Shown: positions 2,280 to 19,377 of the stretch, piece by piece
Layout: every line of letters begins with the position of its first letter
How positions within the stretch are numbered: position 1 is the first letter of the stretch
The notes under the pieces: model-generated
Told to the model about the DNA's origin: nothing
What the model saw: the letters and a program-made list of their open reading frames with translations, nothing else
The model's database searches: none
Translations under genes and position numbers: made by a program
Virus record (IMG/VR): IMGVR_UViG_3300031857_000005
Location: 124,001-188,000 of that record
DNA length: 64,000 nucleotides
Strand: one strand, 5' to 3'

Positions 2280-3761
2280 ATGGGAAGTTTAAGACCGATA
2301 GGTAGTGAAAAACTACAAGGAATGGATAAAATTAAGAGAATTATAGAAATTTCTCGTTATAACGAACATATGCCAAATCCTGTTAATGAAAACGAATCAA
2401 AAGAATATTCTCGTTTTCTTGCTGATGGTAATAGATATGAAATAATTAAAGAAAAATCAGGTTACATTATTAAACACCAAATTTCTGAGGGTGTTTCTGA
2501 CTATATTGAACCTATGAAAAATAGAAAATATTATTCATCTTATTCTCAGGCTTTAAAAAGACTGAATTTAATGGCTAAAGAATTAAATACTCTTCACGAA
2601 AATAAAGAAGAGGTTTCATTATTTGGTGAAGAAAAGAAATTTTACCTTAAGAAGAATATGTCAGAAAAATTAAATATGGATCCAAACAGTATGGATGAAC
2701 TTGATGAACAAGCACCTGCACCCGCAGCACCCGCTCCGGCACCTGCAGCACCCGCTCCGGCACCTGTTCCCGCACCTGAAGATGTTCCTGTAGAACCTGA
2801 AGGAGAACTTCCTCCACCATCAGAAGAAGGAATGGAAGATGAGGGCATGGAAGATACTGAAGAAAATGAAGAAGAAGTAACATTCAAATCAATACAAAAA
2901 TTAACAGGAAAATTAGCACAAAAAATTCGTGACTTTGAATCAAATGGAGAAGAAGATGAAGAAGGTATGGATGGGAATGATGTTAAATATGTTATTAACT
3001 CAATATTGTCGTCATTAGACTTAACAACATTAGATGAAGATGATGTTGATGAAATTGTTGCTCGTTTTGAGGGTGATGAAGAAGGAATGCCTGAGGAAGG
3101 TGGTATGGAAACTGAAGAACCTATGGAACCATCACCTGAAGGAGAAGAAGGTGAAGAATTACCTCCACCACCAGCTGAAGGAGAAATGGCTGAAATGCAA
3201 AATTTAGGTGATAAGTTTATGAATAAACTTAAAGGGGCCTATTCGTCATCATTAGGTAAAAAATTACCTGGTATGGATGAAATGTTCGGTGATGGTGATG
3301 ATGAAGAGTTGGGAACTATGAGAGGTCGTTATTTCGGTGACGAAGAAGAAGAGGATGAGTTTGGATTTGATGACGAAATGGGTTTTGAAGATGAAGAAGA
3401 TGATTATACAATGAGAGGTGCAAGAAAACATAGAAGAATGTATGATGATGAAAATCATTTCTCACACGGAACATTTGGAGAATCCAAAGTAGATAATATT
3501 ATTAAAAAATACTTTGAAATTGACAATAAGGAAAAACAATTAAATGAAGAAAAAAGAAGAAGAGAATTAAGAAACCATATTCTTGAAACTAAATCTGAAA
3601 TTAAAAGATTGTCTGAAACAGTTCGTCAAGAAAGAATGGCGGTTAAATTTTTGAGTGAAAATAAAAAAGCAAGTTTAATTGGAATTACAAATAAGAAAAA
3701 TTTGATATTCAAAGTAAACGAAAATCAATTTAGAATTTCACCAAACGGAACGATTATATGA
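2280..3761 (+). CDS. Hypothetical acidic protein with Pro/Ala linker; probable internal head protein
   Basis: ORF track; PAPAAPAPA linker, D/E-rich tracts, upstream TATTTAT motif. Confidence 0.6.
   Translation: MGSLRPIGSEKLQGMDKIKRIIEISRYNEHMPNPVNENESKEYSRFLADGNRYEIIKEKSGYIIKHQISEGVSDYIEPMKNRKYYSSYSQALKRLNLMAKELNTLHENKEEVSLFGEEKKFYLKKNMSEKLNMDPNSMDELDEQAPAPAAPAPAPAAPAPAPVPAPEDVPVEPEGELPPPSEEGMEDEGMEDTEENEEEVTFKSIQKLTGKLAQKIRDFESNGEEDEEGMDGNDVKYVINSILSSLDLTTLDEDDVDEIVARFEGDEEGMPEEGGMETEEPMEPSPEGEEGEELPPPPAEGEMAEMQNLGDKFMNKLKGAYSSSLGKKLPGMDEMFGDGDDEELGTMRGRYFGDEEEEDEFGFDDEMGFEDEEDDYTMRGARKHRRMYDDENHFSHGTFGESKVDNIIKKYFEIDNKEKQLNEEKRRRELRNHILETKSEIKRLSETVRQERMAVKFLSENKKASLIGITNKKNLIFKVNENQFRISPNGTII
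2724..2765 (+). repeat. 21-nt tandem duplication (AAPAPAP x2)
   Basis: gcagcacccgctccggcacct occurs at 2724-2744 and 2745-2765. Confidence 0.9.
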
Positions 3762-10289: not shown

Positions 10290-11006
10290 ATGAAATTTGG
10301 TTTATTAAAATCACAGATAGAAAATATATTGATTGAGTCATATAAGAACGAATCAATAAAAGATAATATGTTTATCTTTAAAGAGTTGGTACTTAAAAAC
10401 AAAAACATTAGTAGAATGTTTTATTTATATGACGAGTTAAATTCTAATAAAGGACTTAATGAGTCCATTGCTAGTGAATATATAAATCAAAGTATTATTG
10501 TTTATGAAAATTTAACCAATAAAATTAACCCTAACCAATTGAGAGAAATTCAATCGTGGGTGGGACACATACAATGTGAAAATAACTACACATTGGTGGA
10601 TGATTTGTTTTCTAACAATGTTACAAATTTAGAATCTAAAATTAAAAGTAAAAATACAATTTTAGAGAATCTAAAGAAAGAACCAAAAAAAGAAAAAGAG
10701 ATTATTAATGTCCCAATAAAAACTATGGTTAGTGTTGCAAACAAAACGGCATCAAACTATATTGAAAGTTTAAACGAATCAGATAAAACTGAACTGAAAA
10801 AACTTTTGTCATCTGATGATGAAACTATAAAGGAGTCTTACTTAATCCTTAAAGGAAAAGTAATTTCTAAATTAGAAAGACTACAAGAAAGCGAGCAAGA
10901 TAATGATGTAACTTCTAAAATAGACGAAACAATACAGAAAATTCAAAATGAATCTTTTGATAAGGTTGGTTATTTTAAGTTACAAAAATTGAATGAAAAT
11001 CTTTAA
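10290..11006 (+). CDS. Hypothetical protein (head module)
   Basis: ORF track; follows portal; upstream TATTTAT. Confidence 0.75.
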   Translation: MKFGLLKSQIENILIESYKNESIKDNMFIFKELVLKNKNISRMFYLYDELNSNKGLNESIASEYINQSIIVYENLTNKINPNQLREIQSWVGHIQCENNYTLVDDLFSNNVTNLESKIKSKNTILENLKKEPKKEKEIINVPIKTMVSVANKTASNYIESLNESDKTELKKLLSSDDETIKESYLILKGKVISKLERLQESEQDNDVTSKIDETIQKIQNESFDKVGYFKLQKLNENL

Positions 11007-11188
11007 TCGTTCATAAATTTTTGACGATAAATAGCTCTGTTCTTAATTTCTCGTTTTGAGATTGACTTCTTTTTAAATTCTTTTCTACCATTGAGTAGAG
11101 AATTTTGACGAGTCCTAATAACTTTACTTTTTAGTTCTTTAAGGGCTTTCTCTATATCCCCATTTTTATTCACTCTAACTATTAACAT
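11003..11188 (-). CDS. rpsU: Phage-encoded 30S ribosomal protein bS21 (Bacteroidota type)
   Basis: MLIVRVNKNGDIEKALKELKSKV...RKEFKKKS..KRE...RAIYRQ aligns without gaps to Bacteroidota bS21 as recalled (MLII..K.GENIDRALK..K.KF...F.KPS..R...KA.Y). Confidence 0.88.
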   Translation of the reverse strand: MLIVRVNKNGDIEKALKELKSKVIRTRQNSLLNGRKEFKKKSISKREIKNRAIYRQKFMND

Positions 11189-11228
11189 TATAATTTTTTA
11201 TTGGTTTATTGGTATTTGATATATATCA

Positions 11229-11236
11229 CAAAAATA
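11229..11236 (-). promoter_or_regulatory. Bacteroidota housekeeping -7 element (TAnnTTTG) upstream of rpsU
   Basis: Minus strand reads TATTTTTG ~40 nt upstream of the bS21 start; -33 element not clearly seen. Confidence 0.4.
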
Positions 11237-11279
11237 CTTATTTTTTTGGAAAATAAACGCGATAGTATGAGAAACATCT

Positions 11280-11747
11280 ATGAAAAAAGGAAAAACCGCC
11301 AAAATTAATGGTTTTAGAACATCAAAGGTAGTCTATGGGACGGTAGACTCAAAAGAATTTAAATCACTTTATCTTAATTTACAAACTTGGGTGGAACCAA
11401 AAGAAGACTATGAGAATTGGGTAAGAATTACACAAAATATGTGCCGATCAATTAAACATTCAGTCTATGACAATATAGATAAATCATTATTTGATGATAA
11501 ATTTATTGTGGACATGGATTTAAGAACAAGTGGTTTACATATAAAGAAAAAATCATTCTTAAATCTTGAGATAAACTTATTTTTAATAGATGAGGTAGAT
11601 TTCAAGGACATGAAACTAAAAAGAAAATTAAAAAGTATTATTAAAGGAGTTTATGATGATGTATTAAATAAGAACGAACATTTTAAATTTTATTTGACAA
11701 AAAACGGGAATATAAAAAAACCAAAGGTAAAAATGGAGAAAGTTTAA
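11280..11747 (+). CDS. Hypothetical protein
   Basis: ORF track, 155 aa. Confidence 0.75.
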   Translation: MKKGKTAKINGFRTSKVVYGTVDSKEFKSLYLNLQTWVEPKEDYENWVRITQNMCRSIKHSVYDNIDKSLFDDKFIVDMDLRTSGLHIKKKSFLNLEINLFLIDEVDFKDMKLKRKLKSIIKGVYDDVLNKNEHFKFYLTKNGNIKKPKVKMEKV

Positions 11748-11770
11748 TATTTATATAGAAAACTTTTGAT

Positions 11771-12499
11771 ATGAACCAAAACAGAATATTAGGACCGAAT
11801 GAAACCGGCAGAGGAATTCTTATTGAATACGATGCCGGTTATATTGATCCTTCAGACAAATATAATTCAGATATAATTAAAGAATCTAAAAACTTTTTAG
11901 ATCACTCAAAACCATTTGAGTTCTATGCGGTGTTACAAAAATACAATACCCCAAATAGAAATGGTAGAGTATATCCTGAGAAAGTATTAAAGCGTGAAGC
12001 AGAAAATTATAAGAAGATGATTGAGAAGGGAACTGCATTGTCAGAACTTAATCACCCTGAATCTTCATTAATTGATTTAGACAGAGTTTCCCATTTAATT
12101 ACTGAAGTATGGTGGGATGGACCTGTATTGTTAGGTAAGTTAAAATTATTAACAAGTCCAGGATTTCACGAAAGTGGTATCTGTTCTACTAAAGGAGATT
12201 TAGCGGCGAACTATTTAAGACAAGGAGTTACTTTAGGTATTTCTTCTCGTGGTGTTGGTTCACTTAAAAAAGTGGGAGAACAAAATGAGGTACAGGATGA
12301 TTTTGAATTAATTTGTTTTGACTTAGTATCATCACCATCTACTCCTGGTGCATATCTTTTCTTAGATAAAAACGACAGAATGAAGTTTGACGAGAATCTT
12401 GAGGAAGATAAAAAAATGGCAGTGGAAAGAAATGTTGGTAGTACGGGAAACAAATCACTTGACTTAATGAAGCGTTTATCCGATTATTTGGATAAATAA
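11771..12499 (+). CDS. Prohead core protease (T4 gp21-like)
   Basis: NRNGRVYP, ELNHP, LGISSRGVGS, FDLVSSPSTPGAY. Confidence 0.93.
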   Translation: MNQNRILGPNETGRGILIEYDAGYIDPSDKYNSDIIKESKNFLDHSKPFEFYAVLQKYNTPNRNGRVYPEKVLKREAENYKKMIEKGTALSELNHPESSLIDLDRVSHLITEVWWDGPVLLGKLKLLTSPGFHESGICSTKGDLAANYLRQGVTLGISSRGVGSLKKVGEQNEVQDDFELICFDLVSSPSTPGAYLFLDKNDRMKFDENLEEDKKMAVERNVGSTGNKSLDLMKRLSDYLDK

Positions 12500-12505
12500 A
12501 AATTT

Positions 12506-12721
12506 ATGGAACAAGGAGAAAAATATTTTGTGGCAAAGATCACTTCTGATTTGTTAGATACAGAATCGGGTAAAGTTAAAAAAGTAAGAGAAGAAAAATT
12601 AGTTTTGGGATATTCCCCAACTGATGTGGAAGCTAAAGTTACTAAAGTATATGAAAACTATACAATGGATTGGAGAATCACTTCAATTACAGAGAGTAAA
12701 ATTGATGAAGTAATTGAATAA
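12506..12721 (+). CDS. Hypothetical protein
   Basis: ORF track, 71 aa. Confidence 0.7.
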   Translation: MEQGEKYFVAKITSDLLDTESGKVKKVREEKLVLGYSPTDVEAKVTKVYENYTMDWRITSITESKIDEVIE

Positions 12722-12741
12722 ATTACTAAAGATTAAATTAT

Positions 12742-12770
12742 AAGGATGGACAAATGTTCATCCTTTTTTT
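12742..12770 (+). terminator. Intrinsic terminator
   Basis: aaggatggaca-aa-tgttcatcctt followed by a T-run. Confidence 0.7.
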
Positions 12771-12864
12771 ATGCTCAAAATTTAATTTTTTTTATCTAAA
12801 AATAGTATTAAACTGATTTTTTTGAAAATGTCAAGTATTTATCTGTAAAACTATTCAAAAAATA

Positions 12865-14265
12865 ATGAGCAAAAAAGAATCATTAGTAGAAGATACATTT
12901 ATCCAATTAAAGAATTTGGAGGATGTTATCGCGGAAAACGCACAAGGAATACTTGCATCAACAATGAAGCAAGAAATCAAAGAATTAGTAAAAGAATCTC
13001 TGAACGAACAAGAAGAGGAAGATGAGATTGATTTAGATGCTGAGGTTGATACCGACGCTGATAACGACGAAATGGAAATGGATATGGATTTCGACGATGA
13101 AGACATGGAAGTGAATACTGATATGGATTTCGACGATGAAGATATGGATATGGACATGGATGTCGAAGATGATACCATTGATTTAACAGGAGCCTCAGAT
13201 GAAGAAATTCTTCGTGTATTTAAGGCAATGGGAGATGAAGATGGAATCATTGTAAAAAAAGATGATGAAATGATACATTTATCTGATGATAATGAAGATG
13301 TAGAATACATCATCCAACTTGGAGAATCTGACGAAGACGAAATGGAATTGGACGAAATGTACGATGACGAAATGGATTTTGAAGACGAAGACGAAATGGG
13401 CTTTGAAGACGAAATGGATTTTGGAGACGAAGAAACTGAAGGAGTTATTTATGAGTTAGAACTTGACGACATGGGTAACGAAGAAGAAGAACTTGACATG
13501 GATGACATGGAATCTATTGAAGATGATTATTTCGACATGGAAGAAGAGTATGTTATGGAATCCTCAAAATTCAAATCTAAAGGAGTTGGAATGGGTAACG
13601 CATCAAAATTCAAATACGGTAAAAAACCTAACCAAGAAGGTGGTTTCGATGTTAAGAAAAAACAAGGAACTAGAGGTGTTGGAATGGGTAAAGCTAAATT
13701 TGAATATAAAGAGGAAGTTAACACTGGTAAAGAACCTAAAAAATCTACAACAATTAAAAAGGTAGAGACTAAAGAGGCTTCAAGAACATTAGGTTCAGGT
13801 AAAAGATTTGGTAGAAAAGGTTTAGACAAACCTAAAGCAGCACCAAGACATTTACGAGTTGAATCTACTGACGGTGAATTAAACTTACTTAGAGAAAAAA
13901 ATGAAGAGTATAGAAAGGCACTTAACCTTTTCAGAACAAAGTTAAATGAAGTTGCGGTATTCAATTCAAACTTAGCTTACGCTACGAGATTGTTTACAGA
14001 ACATTCTACAACTAAACAAGAAAAGATTAACATCTTAAGAAGATTTGACAGTGTAGATACTCTTAAAGAATCAAAAAATCTTTACAAATCTATTAAAAAC
14101 GAACTTTCAAACACAAGTACTACGGATAACACAATCACAGAATCAATTGAAAGAAATGTTGTTAAGACTCCATCAAGTGGATCGGCAGTAAATCTAATTG
14201 AATCTAAGACTTATGAAAATCCACAATTCTTGAGAATGAAAGATTTAATGGGAAAATTAAAATAA
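12865..14265 (+). CDS. Prohead core/scaffolding protein (T4 gp22 position) with long acidic D/E/M tract
   Basis: Lies between protease and MCP; coiled-coil C-terminus; DMDFDDED repeats (gatatggatttcgacgatgaaga at 13081 and 13120). Confidence 0.75.
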   Translation: MSKKESLVEDTFIQLKNLEDVIAENAQGILASTMKQEIKELVKESLNEQEEEDEIDLDAEVDTDADNDEMEMDMDFDDEDMEVNTDMDFDDEDMDMDMDVEDDTIDLTGASDEEILRVFKAMGDEDGIIVKKDDEMIHLSDDNEDVEYIIQLGESDEDEMELDEMYDDEMDFEDEDEMGFEDEMDFGDEETEGVIYELELDDMGNEEEELDMDDMESIEDDYFDMEEEYVMESSKFKSKGVGMGNASKFKYGKKPNQEGGFDVKKKQGTRGVGMGKAKFEYKEEVNTGKEPKKSTTIKKVETKEASRTLGSGKRFGRKGLDKPKAAPRHLRVESTDGELNLLREKNEEYRKALNLFRTKLNEVAVFNSNLAYATRLFTEHSTTKQEKINILRRFDSVDTLKESKNLYKSIKNELSNTSTTDNTITESIERNVVKTPSSGSAVNLIESKTYENPQFLRMKDLMGKLK

Positions 14266-14299
14266 AAATAAACTAAAAACAAATAAAAAACCAAAAAAA

Positions 14300-16177
14300 A
14301 TGGGAGCATTATTAGAATCAGGTCTTGTTGGTAATATTGGGTTAAAGCACCTTAAAGTTATCAAAGAAGATACTATTAACAAATGGGACAAATTAGGGTT
14401 CCTTGATGGACTTAAAGGACATCTAAAAGAAAATGTAGCACAGTTGTATGAAAACCAAGCTTCTTTCTTAATTAACGAAGCAACTTCTGAAGGTTCTAAC
14501 GGAGCGTTCGAAACAGTTGTTTTCCCTATCGTAAGAAGAGTTTTCTCTAAATTGTTGGCTAACGATATCGTATCAGTACAAGCAATGAACTTACCTATCG
14601 GTAAATTGTTCTACTTCGTACCTCGTATCCAAGGTTATGAAACAGGAACTGAACAAACTGCAGCAAATAACTATGTTGGTGGTGGTTCACACTACGCACC
14701 TGTAGGAGCACCTAATAACAACGGTGGATCAGTTGATTCATCAGTAATTGGAGCTGGATACCCTGACAATGCAAATGCATATAAGAAAAATCTTTATGAT
14801 TTATTCTACGAAGGTGCTGAAGGACAATTAGATCCTCCAGGATTGTTTGATTACTCAAAAGGAAAATGGTCAGCGGTAACTGCTGAAACTAGCGTACAAG
14901 CATGGAGTAATGGTGATTTGGATAATTATGTTTACTCATCAGGTTCTCAAGTAAGAAAAGTTATTGTTAAACTTTGTGGATGGAATCAAATTGAAGGTTA
15001 CGGAAAATTAATAGGTCCTGATGGAAATGAGGTTGATTCTGAAACTTTCCTTTCTGACTTAAGAATTTTTGCACCTAGAGGAAATGCTGCTTTAACAGGT
15101 ACAACACCTTGTAATGTTGTTTATAACGCTGAAGGTAATCCAAATTCACTATTGTTTAGAGTTGTTACTCAACAATATGGTAAAGGAATCGTTAAATATG
15201 GTTCTAACCGAGGAACTACATTCCCTGAAACAGGTAATGGTGGTTCTTACTACAACATCTGTGATGGTAATGGTTGTATCTATTTAGAAGTAGATTTATC
15301 TTGTCCAGCATGTGCTGACTGTGGTGACACTTCATTAGATGGTTACACAGGAACTACATTGACGGCTAACTTGGCGTCAGGTACTTCATTCTACGCGGCT
15401 TGGAGAACTTATGAGAACCTTGAGTTCCAAGATCAAATTGGTGAGGTTTCTTTTGATTTAGAATCTGTTACAGTTTCTGTATCTGAAAGAAAACTAAGAG
15501 CACAATGGTCACCTGAAATGGCTCAAGATGTTGCGGCATTCCACAATATCGATGCAGAGGCTGAATTGACAGCGTTGTTGTCAGAACAAGTAGCAGCTGA
15601 AATCGACCGTGAAATTCTTCGTGACTTGAGAAAAGGAGCGGCTTGGAATCTTCGTTGGGATTACAACGGATGGAGAAGAATCCAACAAACTACATCTTAC
15701 ACTCAGAAAGATTGGAACCAAACTTTGATTACTGCGATTAACCAATTGTCAGCACAAATCCACAAATCAACATTGAGAGGTGGGGCTAACTGGATCGTTG
15801 TATCTTCTGAGGTTTCTGCAATCTTCGATGATTTAGAATACTTCCACGTATCTAACGCATCTCCTGAGCAAGATCAGTATAACATGGGTATCGAAAGAGT
15901 TGGTACTTTAGCAGGACGTTACCAAGTGTATCGTGATCCTTACTTCCCACCAAACCAAGTTTTGATTGGACACAAAGGAACATCGTTACTTGACACAGGT
16001 TACATCTACGCACCGTATGTACCTCTACAATTGACACCTACAATGTACAATCCGTTCAACTTCACACCTATCAAAGGTATTATGACAAGATACGCTAAGA
16101 AAATGGTTAATAACCGTTTCTACGGTCGTATCACTGTTGATGGAGTTCGTACATTCGATTTAAGAGAATTGAGATAA
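14300..16177 (+). CDS. Major capsid protein (T4 gp23-like) with large central insertion
   Basis: FPIVRRVFSKLLANDIVSVQAMNLPIGKLFY; RKLRAQWSPEMAQD...HNIDAEAELTALLSEQVAAEIDREI; YAPYVPL; GIMTRYA. Confidence 0.96.
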   Translation: MGALLESGLVGNIGLKHLKVIKEDTINKWDKLGFLDGLKGHLKENVAQLYENQASFLINEATSEGSNGAFETVVFPIVRRVFSKLLANDIVSVQAMNLPIGKLFYFVPRIQGYETGTEQTAANNYVGGGSHYAPVGAPNNNGGSVDSSVIGAGYPDNANAYKKNLYDLFYEGAEGQLDPPGLFDYSKGKWSAVTAETSVQAWSNGDLDNYVYSSGSQVRKVIVKLCGWNQIEGYGKLIGPDGNEVDSETFLSDLRIFAPRGNAALTGTTPCNVVYNAEGNPNSLLFRVVTQQYGKGIVKYGSNRGTTFPETGNGGSYYNICDGNGCIYLEVDLSCPACADCGDTSLDGYTGTTLTANLASGTSFYAAWRTYENLEFQDQIGEVSFDLESVTVSVSERKLRAQWSPEMAQDVAAFHNIDAEAELTALLSEQVAAEIDREILRDLRKGAAWNLRWDYNGWRRIQQTTSYTQKDWNQTLITAINQLSAQIHKSTLRGGANWIVVSSEVSAIFDDLEYFHVSNASPEQDQYNMGIERVGTLAGRYQVYRDPYFPPNQVLIGHKGTSLLDTGYIYAPYVPLQLTPTMYNPFNFTPIKGIMTRYAKKMVNNRFYGRITVDGVRTFDLRELR

Positions 16178-16199
16178 TCAATAACTTAAAATAATCCTC

Positions 16200-16230
16200 A
16201 AAGGAGACAAGAAATTGTCTCCTTTTTTTA
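16200..16230 (+). terminator. Intrinsic terminator after MCP
   Basis: aaaggagacaa-gaaa-ttgtctccttt plus a T-run. Confidence 0.85.
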
Positions 16231-16273
16231 TTTATGATAATTTATAATGAGTTATATTTATATAAAAAAGATT

Positions 16274-17392
16274 ATGAAAAAAATATTACTATTTTTAATG
16301 TTATTAATAAGTTCCGTAATAAACGGACAAACAGTATTATATAATGATAATTGTGAAGTATCTGGGTATAACTGGTTTGGGTTTTCAACGAACCCTCAGT
16401 TCCCAAACATATTTTCAACATATTTAGGTGGGACAACATCAATTTCAGATGGACCATCAAATAAACCTCTATATGTTAGTAATAGTAGTTCATTTGGTTT
16501 ATTTGGTCTTGGGGGGTCAGGTTCAGGAAGTGAATATGAAAGATATCAATTACCTAACATAACTGGATTGAATCCTAATAAACTATATAGATTTACTTTT
16601 AAACTTATGGCGTACGCTGAAAATATTACAGGGTTTTCAGGAAGTGGTTTAGACGTTACCGATTCTGTAACGGTAAGAGTTTCGGTAAATAACGGACCAT
16701 ATCAAATTGAGTCTATAATTAAAGGGTGGTCAAACTCATACTGGAGTTTTGATGCAACTGGAATTATTAATGAAACTGCCAATGGATTACCAAATACATA
16801 TAGACCAATATCTGCGGGTAATCAAGAAAATACCGGATTTGGGTATTCTACATATAACTTATTATTAACAAATATTAGTCAAATACAAATTAGAATAGAT
16901 ATGAGATCAAATTATGGTGGTTCTAATTATGGTGAATGGTGGGTAATTGATGATATGGAATTAATAGATGAGGATCCCCTACCTGTTGAGTTGATGTCAT
17001 TTGATGGTATGTCAACTGAGGAAGGTAACCTTTTATTATGGAAAACTGCATCAGAGCACAATTCAGATTATTTTTTAATTCAATCCACAATTGATGGTGA
17101 AAAATACACTACAGTTGATAAAGTTGGTGCTGCGGGTAATAGTAATCAAGTAATGGAATATAGTTTATTAGACACAAAGTATGGTAATAATTTAACCTAT
17201 TATAGATTGTTACAATATGACTTTGACGGTAAATATACTATATACGGTCCAATATTAATTAATAACCAAGTTAAAGAAAAGAAAGTTATTAAAATCATTG
17301 ATTTAATGGGGAAAGAAGTTACAGAATTTTCTTCAAATGGTATATATATTGAGGTATATGAAGATGGTACAATGAGTAAAGTGTGGAGATAA
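16274..17392 (+). CDS. Secreted protein: Sec signal peptide, beta-rich domain, LPVEL Fn3-like domain, T9SS-type C-terminal sorting-like tail
   Basis: MKKILLFLMLLISSVING|Q; PLPVELMSF..W.TASEHNSDYF..S.DG..GNSN..Y...YYRLLQYDFDG; KVIKIIDLMGKEV...GIYIEVYEDGTMSKV. Confidence 0.78.
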   Translation: MKKILLFLMLLISSVINGQTVLYNDNCEVSGYNWFGFSTNPQFPNIFSTYLGGTTSISDGPSNKPLYVSNSSSFGLFGLGGSGSGSEYERYQLPNITGLNPNKLYRFTFKLMAYAENITGFSGSGLDVTDSVTVRVSVNNGPYQIESIIKGWSNSYWSFDATGIINETANGLPNTYRPISAGNQENTGFGYSTYNLLLTNISQIQIRIDMRSNYGGSNYGEWWVIDDMELIDEDPLPVELMSFDGMSTEEGNLLLWKTASEHNSDYFLIQSTIDGEKYTTVDKVGAAGNSNQVMEYSLLDTKYGNNLTYYRLLQYDFDGKYTIYGPILINNQVKEKKVIKIIDLMGKEVTEFSSNGIYIEVYEDGTMSKVWR

Positions 17393-17407
17393 GAAATTAT
17401 CTCCAAT

Positions 17408-17632
17408 TTACTGATTCTTTGTTAGAACCCTAATTGATTTAGATATTACCTCAGACTCCCCAATTGTGAACGCACCTCTACTATGAGCAGCCTTAACTGC
17501 CTCAACTAGATAGTAAATGGAATGATTACTATCTATTGTTGATAAAATCATATCTAAATGTTCTTCAGTTAAAAGATTTATTGTCCCAAATAGATTACCA
17601 TAAATTTCCGATTGTTCTTCACTCATTTCCAT
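17408..17632 (-). CDS. Hypothetical protein
   Basis: ORF track, 74 aa. Confidence 0.65.
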   Translation of the reverse strand: MEMSEEQSEIYGNLFGTINLLTEEHLDMILSTIDSNHSIYYLVEAVKAAHSRGAFTIGESEVISKSIRVLTKNQ

Positions 17633-17670
17633 ATTGTTTGATATTTATAATAATAGACAAGTTTGTTAAA

Positions 17671-18969
17671 ATGTTAAATGATATTATAAAAAAAATTTTA
17701 AGGGAGGCAACTTCAGATAGTAGTGGATCTAGAGGTTCATTTGTTGTACCATTAAGACCTGGTTTAAAAAAATTTGATAAAACACAGTTAGCTCCATTTA
17801 CAGAAAAGGTTTCTAACTATGATAGTCCATTATTAGATTATGATAGTTACGACGGTAAAATGAGTGAAACCAAGAAACAAATTAAAAAAATTGAGGGTAA
17901 GGCTGAGAAATCTACAAAGTATCTCAAAAATCACCCAATTCAAAATGATGATGATGGGGATATTATAAACCCAACACCAGGAAAAGGAAAAAAATTTGTT
18001 CCCATTAAAGAAAGTTCAACATCAATATCTGCGGGAGAATATTCCGGACCAATAGAACTTGGACTTAAAAAATGGAAACCTCAATTGTTGGCTCCATTCA
18101 CAGAATTTGTTGATACTGAAATTAATCATAAGAAAAAACAAAAAACCATGAAAAACAACATCAAAAAACAAGTTGGCGTTTGGGAAAAAAATCCTGACGG
18201 GACTTACAAACAAGATGATCATGATGTTCACACTATTAAAGAGGATTTAGCGGTATGGTTTGGTACAAAGAAAAAACCAAAAGGATCTAAACAACCAAAA
18301 GGTCCATGGGTTGATATTTGTCGTAAGGTAAATGGAAAACATCCACCTTGTGGAAGAAGTGATTCCGACAGTGGTGCATATCCTAAATGTCGTGCAGTAG
18401 GTGTTGCGGGTAAAATGAGTGACTCAGCAAAAAAAGCGGCTTGTCAACAAAAAAGAAAAGCCGAGAAAAAAGACACTCAAACAGGTAAAGGACAAAAACC
18501 AATTATGACATCTTATAAACCAAGAAAAAAAACAAATGAAAATATGAAAACAATTAGATTGACAGAATCTGAATTAGTTAGAATTGTAAAAAAAATTCTT
18601 AACGAAGAAACCTCAATGGGATTAAAAAAGGAAACTCCTCAGATGTTTATGGTAGATAAATTGTGGGATAGAAAAATGATTACCCCAATAGATAACACCA
18701 ATATTAGTGTACAAAAAGGATATGAGGTTTGGTATGGTTATGATAATGTTGGTAGAAAAATTGTTGAATCTTCAAAAGTAATGAGTACTTTTGGTAGGGT
18801 AGAATTAAATTGTAATACAAAAATGGTTGATTATGATACGATGGCAACTAAAAAATATGAGGAGTACTCTATTGACATTGAAAGACAAAAACAATCTGAT
18901 TTTGATTTCTTAAACCCATATTGCTCAATGATTGACTGGAAATATGGTGACAAACCTAAAAAAAGGTAG
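17671..18969 (+). CDS. Hypothetical multi-module basic protein; probable internal head protein (start probably 17671)
   Basis: TATTTAT at 17642; N-terminal IIKKILREA; GKHPPCGRS..YPKCR module; internal TESELVRIVKKILNE motif. Confidence 0.7.
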   Translation: MLNDIIKKILREATSDSSGSRGSFVVPLRPGLKKFDKTQLAPFTEKVSNYDSPLLDYDSYDGKMSETKKQIKKIEGKAEKSTKYLKNHPIQNDDDGDIINPTPGKGKKFVPIKESSTSISAGEYSGPIELGLKKWKPQLLAPFTEFVDTEINHKKKQKTMKNNIKKQVGVWEKNPDGTYKQDDHDVHTIKEDLAVWFGTKKKPKGSKQPKGPWVDICRKVNGKHPPCGRSDSDSGAYPKCRAVGVAGKMSDSAKKAACQQKRKAEKKDTQTGKGQKPIMTSYKPRKKTNENMKTIRLTESELVRIVKKILNEETSMGLKKETPQMFMVDKLWDRKMITPIDNTNISVQKGYEVWYGYDNVGRKIVESSKVMSTFGRVELNCNTKMVDYDTMATKKYEEYSIDIERQKQSDFDFLNPYCSMIDWKYGDKPKKR

Positions 18970-19377
18970 TTATAACACTACCTTTTTTTGTTTTTCTATC
19001 TCAATCTTATATTTTGAGCAGACAATATAATCTTTTTTATTTTTAGTGACTACAAAATCAAATCCTTCTTTAACAGGTATTGAGAATACATATTTGGTTT
19101 TAAACAAATTATCCTTAATTGCTACAATAATCACACAGTTACCATCAAATGATTTTTCTACTATAGTATATGGTTTTTCATTTGAAAATAGTTTATATGG
19201 GTGTACCATATCTGCCATCATATGAAATAGATAATTATATTTTGGAGTTTTTTCTTTTCCATTTTTATAAATTACTAATGGTTCCACATCAATGTAGTGA
19301 ATACTATCACAGTTAAATTGTGAGAAACTATAAAAAGACATTAAAAAAGATACGATTAATAAAAATAGATTTTTCAT
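18970..19377 (-). CDS. Secreted hypothetical protein
   Basis: Signal peptide MKNLFLLIVSFLMSFYSFS|Q; TAGTTTTG (-7 element) at 19399-19406 on the minus strand. Confidence 0.7.
   Translation of the reverse strand: MKNLFLLIVSFLMSFYSFSQFNCDSIHYIDVEPLVIYKNGKEKTPKYNYLFHMMADMVHPYKLFSNEKPYTIVEKSFDGNCVIIVAIKDNLFKTKYVFSIPVKEGFDFVVTKNKKDYIVCSKYKIEIEKQKKVVL

What the first reader, a model, noticed from the sequence alone, without database searches (positions are those of the whole stretch)
16255..17392. Phage-encoded Type IX secretion (T9SS)-like cargo directly downstream of the major capsid gene
Seen in sequence: a Sec signal peptide ending in G|Q, a ~220-aa beta-rich domain, the 'LPVEL..F...W.TASE.N...YYRL.Q.DFDG' domain, and a C-terminal 'KIIDLMGKEV...GIYIEVYEDG..SK' tail. 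It is preceded by the same TATTTAT motif as the capsid genes. Established knowledge: this domain pair is a hallmark of Bacteroidota T9SS-secreted proteins, and Gln at +1 follows the Bacteroidota pyroglutamate Q-rule. Inference: late in infection the phage may send its own protein through the host T9SS to the cell surface or medium, for superinfection exclusion, receptor masking, lysis assistance or virion adhesion. I know of no characterised phage T9SS substrate. The tail is short (~45 aa), so the sorting signal may be degenerate.
Basis: partly seen in the sequence, partly recalled or inferred. Interest (0 to 1): 0.82.

Follow-up and report, generated by a model that had tools for sequence, protein, structure and literature searches.

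The report
Phage secreted lectin-like protein, short T9SS-like tail
A freshwater T4-like phage carries, just after its capsid gene, a gene for an exported sugar-binding-type protein whose binding domain is swapped wholesale between near-identical phages; its C-terminal end looks like a cut-down version of the tag that Bacteroidota use for type IX secretion.

Summary
ORF 16274-17392 (372 aa) follows the gp23-like capsid gene, behind a terminator and its own RTATTTAT promoter-like motif. It encodes four parts:
- a Sec signal peptide with invariant Gln at +1;
- a MAM/CBM-like jelly-roll;
- an FN3-like 'LPVEL' domain;
- a conserved ~40-aa tail.

The family has more than 700 protein clusters, mostly on large phage contigs.

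No T9SS CTD HMM matches: 0 of 46 family members and 0 of 80 other tail-bearing proteins. Fold search finds only FN3 domains. So this is not a canonical type A CTD.

The T9SS link still has support:
- In Bacteroidota genomes the same FN3-like domain sits directly before canonical PF18962 CTDs.
- The tail aligns to CTD strands β3-β4 and β6-β7 (hhalign P about 1e-4; 0 of 200 shuffles reach it).
- It keeps the Gly and the C-terminal Lys that published work shows matter for secretion.
- The FN3+tail module always ends proteins with diverse adhesin-type N-termini, in phages and in some bacterial chromosomes.

A sister phage, 96-98% identical in the flanks, has exactly the jelly-roll cassette replaced.

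Best reading (about 0.5): a late, Sec- and T9SS-exported variable lectin. Phage T9SS cargo has been predicted before, so this is a new variant of a known kind.

The parts
16200..16225 (+). Intrinsic-terminator-like hairpin plus T-run that ends the MCP transcription unit
   Evidence: Terminator scan. Metatranscriptome contigs cover the MCP gene up to ~16155, and none cover 16260-19000.
16254..16261 (+). ATATTTAT promoter-like motif, 20 nt upstream of the start codon (putative late promoter)
   Evidence: Nine of the 17 copies in the window lie 19-39 nt upstream of gene starts. RTATTTAT is present upstream of the homologue in 15 of 22 distinct MCP-linked loci, against 3 of 34 loci in the other context.
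16274..17392 (+). Coding sequence of the 372-aa exported protein, stop codon included. An upstream in-frame ATG at 16247 is unlikely to be the start.
   Evidence: ORF list and homologue N-termini.
16274..16327 (+). Sec/SPI signal peptide (residues 1-18); predicted cleavage VING|Q
   Evidence: KK, then a 13-residue hydrophobic core, then a polar c-region. AF2 models a helix at 2-16. Gln19 is invariant in 46 homologues and at least 90% conserved in 80 other tail-bearing proteins.
16328..16972 (+). N-terminal beta-jelly-roll domain (residues 19-233), MAM/CBM/'cleaved-adhesin'-like. It is the swappable cassette (no similarity to L169 across 16337-16976).
   Evidence: Foldseek PDB hits are MAM-Ig-FN (PTPRK, PTPRmu), meprin MAM and GH2 sugar-binding domains, E 1e-6 to 1e-4. 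Atlas leads point the same way. Cassette replacement is shown.
16973..17263 (+). FN3-like 7-strand 'LPVEL' domain (residues 234-330)
   Evidence: AF2 strands. Foldseek finds FNIII domains. The profile finds 102,962 50%-clusters. In Bacteroidota genomes the domain directly precedes PF18962 CTDs.
17264..17389 (+). Conserved C-terminal tail (residues 331-372), 3 strands. Proposed shortened T9SS type-A CTD derivative ('mini-CTD') with invariant Gly346 and near-invariant Lys369.
   Evidence: Conservation. hhalign against bona fide CTDs gives P 1e-4 to 1e-3, and 0 of 200 shuffles reach the real score. It always lies at the extreme C-terminus.
17385..17404 (.). Hairpin GGAGATAA-GAAA-TTATCTCC overlapping the stop codon, between this gene and the convergent 74-aa ORF (17408-17632, minus strand)
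   Evidence: Read directly from the sequence. The terminator scan did not flag it because there is no T-run.

Best explanation
The gene encodes a phage protein made late in infection, from its own RTATTTAT-type promoter, that leaves the cytoplasm.

Proposed route:
1. The Sec pathway and signal peptidase I remove an 18-residue leader and expose Gln19 (the Bacteroidota Q-rule).
2. The mature protein has three parts: a variable jelly-roll ligand-binding domain (probably glycan-binding), an FN3-like spacer, and a 40-residue tail.
3. The tail is a cut-down type-A T9SS sorting domain. It keeps the beta3-beta4 loop glycine and the C-terminal lysine strand.
4. The host type IX secretion system most likely carries the protein across the outer membrane. 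It is then displayed on, or released from, the infected Bacteroidota cell.

The binding domain behaves as an exchangeable cassette on a constant export frame (signal peptide plus FN3 plus tail). That fits a ligand that varies between host strains, such as a surface glycan. A likely role is masking receptors or otherwise conditioning the cell surface around lysis.

Shown here: the ORF, the domains, conservation, synteny, the cassette swap, and motif-level similarity to the CTD.
Inferred: signal-peptide cleavage, late timing, T9SS dependence, the ligand and the biological role.
For: Head-module context:
- The gene follows TerL, portal, S77-type protease, scaffold and gp23-like MCP.
- It has its own terminator and promoter-like motif.

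Export:
- The signal peptide has an invariant Gln at +1.
- The Q-rule is specific to Bacteroidetes SPI substrates (PMC5837995).

Link between the C-terminal module and the T9SS:
- The best 80 genome loci with the FN3-like domain are all Bacteroidota.
- In about 85 of those proteins the domain is followed directly by a ~85-aa PF18962 CTD. That CTD set matches solved T9SS CTDs 8glk, 8glj, 8qb1 and 5hfs.
- In the phage type the same position holds the 40-aa tail.
- hhalign aligns vvK.iNllGQEV to the CTD i.v.D..G+.v segment, and GivIEvYeDGT..K to G.Y.i.i...K: global P 2e-4, official run P 9.7e-5 with probability 58%. None of 200 column shuffles reached the real score.
- Gly346 is invariant and Lys369 is at least 90% conserved.
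- The equivalent loop-beta3-beta4 Gly and C-terminal motif are needed for secretion of RgpB and PorU (PMC11285876). The C-terminal Lys is the one conserved CTD residue that contacts PorV (PMC10994853).

Behaviour as a sorting module:
- 133 of the best 148 50%-cluster representatives carry FN3+tail at the extreme C-terminus of proteins 131-1595 aa long.
- Most of these have signal peptides.
- Their N-terminal domains are typical of T9SS cargo: GEVED, CUB, GBD_T9SS_assoc, CHU_C-associated Ig, PKD and MAM.
- The module also occurs in true bacterial chromosomal contexts (L130, L093, L165).

Cassette swap:
- L169 is 96.4% identical to window 10337-16336 and 98.1% identical to 16977-18319.
- It is unrelated across 16337-16976, which encodes residues 22-234.

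Precedent: predicted, variable T9SS-CTD genes in a Bacteroidetes phage (PMC7468147).
Against: - No T9SS CTD HMM matches the protein, 46 family members or 80 other tail-bearing proteins, even at E up to 10 for the family.
- The tail profile finds no solved CTD by sequence.
- Foldseek finds only FN3 domains for the C-terminal module.
- The tail has 3 strands and ~40 aa. Functional type-A signals are described as 7-strand sandwiches of ~70-100 aa (PMC12618676, PMC10994853).
- The hhalign probability is only 20-58%.
- No transcript contigs of the gene were seen in four metatranscriptomes that hold MCP transcripts. This is weak, because contigs show presence only.
- The host is unknown.
- The biological role is speculative. 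Late timing rests on a motif, not on data.
Confidence: 0.5

Rival explanations
1. The protein is exported by Sec but does not use the T9SS. It would stay in the periplasm or associate with the outer membrane, for example as a periplasmic lectin or exclusion factor. The tail would be only a structural extension of the FN3-like domain that happens to resemble part of a CTD.
For: - All CTD HMM and fold tests were negative.
- The tail is half the length of any functional type-A CTD described (PMC12618676).
- The hhalign probability is modest.
Against: - The tail occupies exactly the place of the CTD after the same FN3-like domain.
- It keeps the two functionally important CTD motifs (PMC11285876, PMC10994853).
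- The module ends very large bacterial GEVED, PKD and CUB proteins, which are classic surface or extracellular cargo and are hard to picture as periplasmic residents.
- It is always at the extreme C-terminus.
Confidence: 0.27
2. The protein is a virion component: a Hoc-like capsid decoration or head-fibre adhesin encoded next to the MCP gene. The hydrophobic N-terminus would be a propeptide or assembly signal rather than a secretion signal.
For: - Its position is directly after the MCP gene, under a motif shared with structural genes.
- It has an Ig/FN3-like domain plus a variable binding domain, as in phage decoration proteins and fibres.
- Cassette exchange is typical of receptor-binding proteins.
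Against: - It has a canonical cleavable signal peptide with invariant Gln +1 throughout the family.
- The same C-terminal module occurs on chromosomal bacterial secreted proteins far from any phage genes.
- 48 of 80 viral loci carry the gene away from MCP, with a different upstream motif.
- It has no PHROG or structural-protein match.
- The MCP transcript ends before it.
Confidence: 0.1
3. The gene is a recently captured, decaying host gene with no function for the phage.
For: - The C-terminal module is shared with host-phylum proteins.
- The CTD-like part is truncated.
Against: - The family has more than 700 clusters, with intact ORFs across phages whose MCPs differ by up to ~28%.
- The truncated tail is itself strongly conserved, at 53% mean column identity with invariant Gly and Tyr.
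- GC is 30.8%, equal to the window's 30.4%.
- The cassette swap preserves the reading frame, the signal peptide and the tail.
Confidence: 0.02

Closest known systems
Bacteroidota T9SS type-A cargo proteins with an FN3-like 'LPVEL' domain followed by a Por_Secre_tail CTD (PF18962/TIGR04183), e.g. the Brumimicrobium, Crocinitomicaceae and Cyclobacteriaceae proteins in loci L085-L164
   Same: - A Sec signal peptide and variable adhesin- or enzyme-type N-terminal domains.
- A homologous FN3-like domain, 36-51% identical.
- A sorting-type element at the extreme C-terminus.
- A conserved Gly in the i.D..G+.V segment and a Lys in the last strand.
   Different: - After the D.DG motif the phage type has 52-54 residues instead of 93-104.
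- It lacks the YPNP strand pair and the middle hairpin.
- It is not detected by PF18962 or TIGR04183.
- It is predicted to have 3 strands rather than a 7-strand sandwich.
- It is found mainly on viral contigs.
Predicted phage-encoded T9SS cargo: 'Cryophage' flexible genes (Bellas et al. 2020, PMC7468147), and T9SS-sorting-domain ORFs near the head module of crAss-BACON cluster 2 phages (de Jonge et al. 2019, PMC6949934)
   Same: - They are Bacteroidota phages.
- The secreted-cargo genes are among the most variable ('flexible') genes between near-identical phage genomes.
- The genes lie near head genes.
- No experimental proof exists in either case.
   Different: - Those carry canonical type-A CTDs recognised by HMMs, with enzymatic or PA14 passengers. 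Here the signal is a short, HMM-invisible variant and the passenger is a lectin-like jelly-roll.
- The phage here is a large T4-like myovirus-type genome.
- The swap boundaries are mapped to the domain borders.
T4 Hoc and other Ig-like capsid decoration proteins
   Same: - Encoded near the major capsid gene.
- Contain Ig/FN3-like domains.
- Thought to mediate adhesion.
   Different: - Hoc has no signal peptide and binds the capsid by its C-terminal domain.
- Here a cleavable Q-rule signal peptide is invariant, and the C-terminal module is shared with bacterial secreted proteins.
MAM / CBM / 'cleaved adhesin' jelly-roll domains (PF00629, PF07675, PF02018, PF23759 GBD_T9SS_assoc)
   Same: - The predicted fold of residues 19-233.
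- The same kinds of domain occur in other proteins that carry this tail.
   Different: - No Pfam model reaches significance on this protein.
- The ligand is unknown.

Membership tests
T9SS type-A CTD cargo (TIGR04183 / PF18962 Por_Secre_tail) | Significant match to the CTD profile HMM | tested here: not met
   There was no hit for the protein at E up to 10. 0 of 46 family members matched in NCBIfam. 0 of 80 other tail-bearing proteins matched in Pfam. As positive controls, bacterial neighbours of the same FN3-like domain hit PF18962 at 1e-9 to 1e-13.
T9SS type-A CTD cargo (TIGR04183 / PF18962 Por_Secre_tail) | C-terminal 7-strand Ig-like beta-sandwich of ~70-100 aa | tested here: not met
   AF2 models 3 strands in ~40 aa after the FN3-like domain. 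Foldseek against the PDB returns FN3 domains only, with no CTD chain in the best 50.
T9SS type-A CTD cargo (TIGR04183 / PF18962 Por_Secre_tail) | N-terminal Sec signal peptide, and the signal located at the extreme C-terminus | tested here: met
   The signal peptide has invariant Gln +1. The module ends within a few residues of the C-terminus in all 133 tail-bearing representatives seen. SignalP itself was not available.
T9SS type-A CTD cargo (TIGR04183 / PF18962 Por_Secre_tail) | Conserved loop-beta3-beta4 glycine, and conserved lysine in the last strand (functionally required; the Lys contacts PorV) | tested here: inconclusive
   Gly346 is invariant and Lys369 is at least 90% conserved. They align to the CTD Gly and Lys columns in hhalign at P 1e-4 to 1e-3, and 0 of 200 shuffles reach the real score. 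Equivalence rests on a weak alignment. The literature basis is PMC11285876 and PMC10994853.
T9SS type-A CTD cargo (TIGR04183 / PF18962 Por_Secre_tail) | Restriction to T9SS-bearing Bacteroidota (and their phages) | tested here: met
   All 80 best genome loci are Bacteroidota. The Q-rule signal peptides agree. Only the best hits could be inspected.
T9SS type-A CTD cargo (TIGR04183 / PF18962 Por_Secre_tail) | Secretion dependent on SprA/PorV/GldKLMN, with removal of the CTD by PorU | not testable with these tools
   This needs genetics and biochemistry.
T9SS type-B CTD cargo (TIGR04131 / PF13585 CHU_C) | Match to the CHU_C/type-B profile, and a cognate PorP/SprF-like gene downstream | tested here: not met
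   There were no hits. The downstream genes are a convergent 74-aa ORF and a 433-aa ORF, neither with a Pfam match.
Bacteroidota Sec/SPI 'Q-rule' substrates | Cleavable signal peptide exposing N-terminal Gln | tested here: met
   The sequence pattern is VING|QT. Gln19 is invariant in 46 sequences and at least 90% conserved in 80 others. Actual cleavage and pyroglutamate formation were not testable.
Hoc-like capsid decoration proteins | Cytoplasmic protein (no signal peptide) with a capsid-binding domain, present in virions | tested here: not met
   A signal peptide is present and conserved. There is no PHROG match. The C-terminal module is shared with bacterial chromosomal proteins. Virion presence was not testable.
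Exosortase/sortase-type C-terminal signals (PEP-CTERM, LPXTG and relatives) | C-terminal motif followed by a hydrophobic helix and a basic tail | tested here: not met
   The tail is beta-strand and charged. NCBIfam shows only one noise-level PEP-CTERM hit (E 0.34) in 46 members.

The most novel reading that the evidence does not exclude
The FN3-like domain plus 40-residue tail would be a distinct, so far unmodelled class of minimal T9SS sorting signal, used above all by large phages of freshwater Bacteroidota. With it they would push hypervariable, cassette-exchanged lectin or adhesin domains through the host's T9SS late in infection. The type IX translocon and PorV would then accept a signal half the size of any characterised CTD, and phages would routinely remodel the surface of the cells they are about to lyse.
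Probability: 0.35. Interest if true: 0.75.

Novelty: new variant of a known kind. Interest (0 to 1): 0.6.

Why it matters
If the short tail works as a T9SS signal, three things follow:
- It would define the smallest natural type-A-like sorting element, and would test current ideas that the CTD fold rather than its motifs is what is recognised.
- It would reveal a large set of cargo that standard HMM-based T9SS secretome predictions miss: hundreds of 50%-identity clusters.
- It would show that lytic T4-like phages of Bacteroidota export their own variable surface-binding proteins.

The exact replacement of the passenger domain between 96-98% identical phages marks this gene as a hotspot of phage-host or phage-phage conflict. 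In that respect it is comparable to tail-fibre loci, and it gives a concrete handle for finding the ligand.

Tried and rejected
- Pfam, NCBIfam and PHROGs scans of the protein and of 46 family members found no meaningful hit.
- A sequence search of the PDB with the whole-protein, C-module and tail profiles returned only noise.
- tblastn against 50,697 deposited phage genomes found only three huge uncultured phages, which share the C-terminal module. No cultured phage has it.
- A search for paralogues within the window found none.
- Foldseek on the C-terminal model, run to look for T9SS CTD folds, found FN3 domains only.
- Metatranscriptome mapping showed the MCP gene heavily covered and this gene not covered. 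It is uninformative about absence, because only contigs are held and the gene diverges fast.
- A FastTree of the FN3-like domain, built to ask whether short-tail forms have one origin, showed strong clustering (6 changes against ~40 in shuffles). The tree is too poorly resolved to decide.
- Recent host-gene capture was considered and rejected on conservation and GC.
- A prohead-protease propeptide was considered instead of a signal peptide. It was rejected because the N-terminus is a classical n-h-c leader and the same leader type occurs on bacterial chromosomal proteins with this module.
- Two literature searches for further phage T9SS reports returned nothing relevant.
Full report
**What is there.** The window carries a T4-type head module on the + strand:
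- large terminase (6406);
- portal (8442);
- S77-type prohead protease (11771);
- a very acidic scaffold-like ORF (12865);
- a 625-aa gp23-like major capsid protein, MCP (14300-16177).

The closest cultured relatives of the MCP are Flavobacterium phage immuto and Microcystis phage Mel-JY01, at ~41-42% identity. After the MCP stop comes a terminator-like hairpin with a T-run (16200-16225). Next is the motif ATATTTAT at 16254. The ORF in question follows at 16274-17392. Homologues begin at the MKK of 16274, not at the upstream ATG of 16247.

**Is it more than chance?** Yes. A protein search found at least 708 clusters (90% identity) of ~350-380 aa. Many lie on contigs of 125-300 kb. In an alignment of 46 spread members, the signal peptide's Gln19, a set of acidic and aromatic residues in the N-domain, the LPVEL/W.TASE/YY..Q.D.DG motifs, and Gly346, Gly356, Tyr362, Asp364, Gly365 and Lys369 of the tail are invariant or nearly so. 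The gene's GC (30.8%) equals the window mean of 30.4%.

**Anatomy.**
- AlphaFold2 with this alignment gives mean pLDDT 83.7.
- It models a leader helix (2-16), an all-beta domain (about 20-233), a seven-strand domain (237-330) and three final strands (338-371).
- Foldseek against the PDB matches the first domain plus the second to MAM-Ig-FN modules (PTPRK, PTPRmu), meprin MAM domains and the sugar-binding/Ig parts of GH2 enzymes, at E 1e-6 to 1e-4.
- Language-model neighbours of residues 19-235 include Cleaved_Adhesin, MAM, InhA-like MAM and CBM_4_9 clusters. These are leads only.
- The C-terminal module modelled alone (pLDDT 89.5) matches FNIII domains only, at E of 1e-3 or weaker.

**The T9SS question: negative tests.**
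- Neither the protein nor any of 46 family members hits TIGR04183, TIGR04131 or PF18962, even with E allowed up to 10.
- None of 80 other proteins with the same tail hits PF18962.
- Profiles of the module or the tail find no solved CTD.
- The tail has three strands and about 40 residues. Type-A CTDs are seven-strand sandwiches, and about 100 aa is used as the functional signal (PMC12618676, PMC10994853).
- On the defining features, this is therefore not a canonical type-A or type-B CTD.

**The T9SS question: positive evidence.**
- A profile of residues 234-372 finds 102,962 clusters at 50% identity in a 1.8-billion-protein library. Of these, 612 score below E 1e-30.
- Of the best 148 hits, 133 carry FN3+tail at the extreme C-terminus of proteins 131-1595 aa long with unrelated N-termini. 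Most have signal peptides with Gln near the cleavage site.
- Their N-terminal Pfam domains are GEVED, CUB, GBD_T9SS_assoc, CHU_C-associated Ig, PKD, P-domain and MAM. This is the usual repertoire of T9SS surface cargo.
- In species-representative genomes the 80 best loci are all Bacteroidota.
- There the same FN3-like domain is followed, at fixed spacing, by a ~85-aa domain with the YPNP...D..G+.V...G.Y.....K pattern. That domain scores as PF18962 and matches solved T9SS CTDs: NucA and another substrate in the translocon complexes 8glk and 8glj, mirolase 8qb1, and gingipain 5hfs/5ag8.
- After the D.DG motif the bacterial proteins have 93-104 residues. The phage type has 52-54.
- Profile-profile alignment places the tail's vvK.iNllGQEV on the CTD's beta3-loop-beta4 segment, and GivIEvYeDGT..K on beta6-beta7. 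Scores are local P 1e-3, global P 2e-4, and P 9.7e-5 with probability 58% in the official run. None of 200 column-shuffled controls reached the real score in either mode.
- These two pieces are the ones with known function. The loop-beta3-beta4 glycine and the C-terminal motif are required for secretion of RgpB and PorU (PMC11285876). The near-invariant lysine in the last strand is the only conserved CTD residue that contacts PorV (PMC10994853).
- Gly346 is invariant here, and Lys369 is at least 90% conserved.

**Phage or host?**
- The short-tail form is mainly viral. IMG/VR holds 293 related loci, whereas only about five of the best 80 genome loci have the short tail.
- It is not exclusively viral. 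L130 is a 308-kb Flavobacteriales contig with a tandem pair beside a TonB-dependent receptor and a CHU_C protein. L093 lies beside PEPCK and a UvrA-like gene. L165 holds a 1595-aa GEVED protein among housekeeping genes. All three are bacterial.
- These bacterial proteins share only the C-terminal module with the phage protein, at 32-36% identity.
- A module shared by secreted bacterial proteins argues against a capsid-binding role.

**Synteny and regulation.**
- In 32 of 80 viral loci the homologue lies directly downstream of the MCP gene. It is sometimes separated from it by an extra ~227-aa ORF, and is twice in convergent orientation.
- In four of these loci the slot holds a 592-820-aa protein with another N-terminus but the same module.
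- The other 48 loci have the gene elsewhere in large phage genomes.
- RTATTTAT precedes the gene in 15 of 22 distinct MCP-linked loci, but in only 3 of 34 others. The others share a different A/C-rich upstream motif.
- In the window, 9 of the 17 ATATTTAT copies lie 19-39 nt upstream of gene starts. Calling the motif 'late' is an analogy with T4's TATAAATA, not a measurement.
- Four freshwater metatranscriptomes hold many contigs on the MCP gene that stop near 16155, and none on 16260-19000. This agrees with the terminator but cannot show that the gene is silent.

**Cassette exchange.**
- Domain-wise identities are mosaic. P0012 shares 100% of the signal peptide and 94-98% of FN3+tail with the window protein, but only 38% of the N-domain.
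- P0002, P0005 and P0006 show the reverse: 79-82% in the N-domain and 43-50% in the module.
- At DNA level the P0012 locus (L169) is 96.4% identical to window 10337-16336 and 98.1% identical to 16977-18319. It has no detectable similarity across 16337-16976, which encodes residues 22-234.
- The passenger domain is thus replaced precisely between a constant leader and a constant export or anchor module, in otherwise near-identical phages.
- This mirrors the 'flexible' T9SS-CTD genes of Cryophage (PMC7468147). It points to a ligand that differs between host strains or competitors.

**Interpretation.**
- I rate it about 0.85 that this is a functional, Sec-exported phage protein with a variable binding domain.
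- I rate it about 0.5 that it crosses the outer membrane by the T9SS using a shortened CTD derivative.
- The role is inference. Masking or conditioning of surface glycans around lysis is more likely than early superinfection exclusion, given the structural-gene-type promoter.

The rivals are:
- Sec export without T9SS (0.27);
- a virion decoration protein (0.1);
- a dead captured gene (0.02).

**Novelty.** Phage-encoded T9SS cargo has been predicted before (PMC7468147, PMC6949934). P. gingivalis phages are known to carry Q-rule signal peptides (PMC10367356). None has been characterised. Three things are new here:
- a large family in T4-like freshwater phages that uses a short tail invisible to the HMMs;
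- the evidence that this FN3+tail module is a widespread C-terminal unit;
- the domain-exact cassette swap.

This is a new variant of a known kind, and of moderate to good interest.

Noticed in passing
window 11003-11188 (- strand): A 61-aa ORF inside the head module matches ribosomal protein bS21 (PF01165, 28.1 bits against a cutoff of 27, E 1.7e-6). The syntenic ORF in L169 carries the same weak Pfam flag.
   Followed up: partly
window 16973-17263, and loci L085-L164: The FN3-like 'LPVEL' domain has no model in the Pfam-A or NCBIfam copies used here. Yet its profile finds about 103,000 50%-identity clusters, with up to 12 tandem copies per protein. In Bacteroidota it is the usual last domain before the T9SS CTD.
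   Followed up: partly
window 14300-16177: The gp23-like MCP is 625 aa. It aligns to T4-type capsid proteins in two pieces, which implies a large insertion (about residues 100-340) relative to classical gp23.
   Followed up: no
window 18970-19377 (- strand): This is the only other ORF in the window with a classical signal peptide (MKNLFLLIVSFLMSFYSFS|QF). It also has Gln at the predicted +1 position. It is 135 aa with no family match.
   Followed up: partly
L004 5223-5909, L009 5213-5896, L017 5212-5901, L052 4096-4776; L043 6982-8974, L052 5970-7857: The slot between the MCP gene and the next conserved (convergent ~74-aa) gene is a variable island. Some relatives carry an extra ~227-aa ORF before the cargo gene (no Pfam hit). 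Others carry about 2 kb of extra small ORFs after it.
   Followed up: partly
L013, L014, L019, L023, L033, L035, L041, L044, L048, L077 (40 nt upstream of the homologue): Homologues that are not next to MCP share a different conserved upstream sequence (AAAAAACATATACCCGTAAAACAAAACA...) instead of RTATTTAT. This suggests another promoter class or timing for that subfamily.
   Followed up: no
L168 (LR745206.1, a 635-kb uncultured phage) 1691-2965 and 2932-3369: A huge phage carries the same FN3+short-tail module in a different reading frame from the preceding 424-aa signal-peptide ORF. This is either a frameshifted gene or an assembly error.
   Followed up: no
PDB 7jvi chain A, residues 815-836 of 847: The tail profile's best PDB hit, though not significant (E 0.34), is the C-terminal segment KVYNLQGQRVATNYHGIII of a 'beta-helix domain' protein. 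It shows the same short spacing between the G-x-x-V and G-I-x-I segments.
   Followed up: no
window 12865-14265: The scaffold-position ORF is extremely acidic, with long D/E/M-rich repeats. It has no Pfam or PHROG match.
   Followed up: no
window 17385-17404: A perfect 8-bp hairpin (GGAGATAA-GAAA-TTATCTCC) overlaps the stop codon, between the convergent cargo gene and the 74-aa ORF. It has no T-run, so the terminator scan did not flag it.
   Followed up: no
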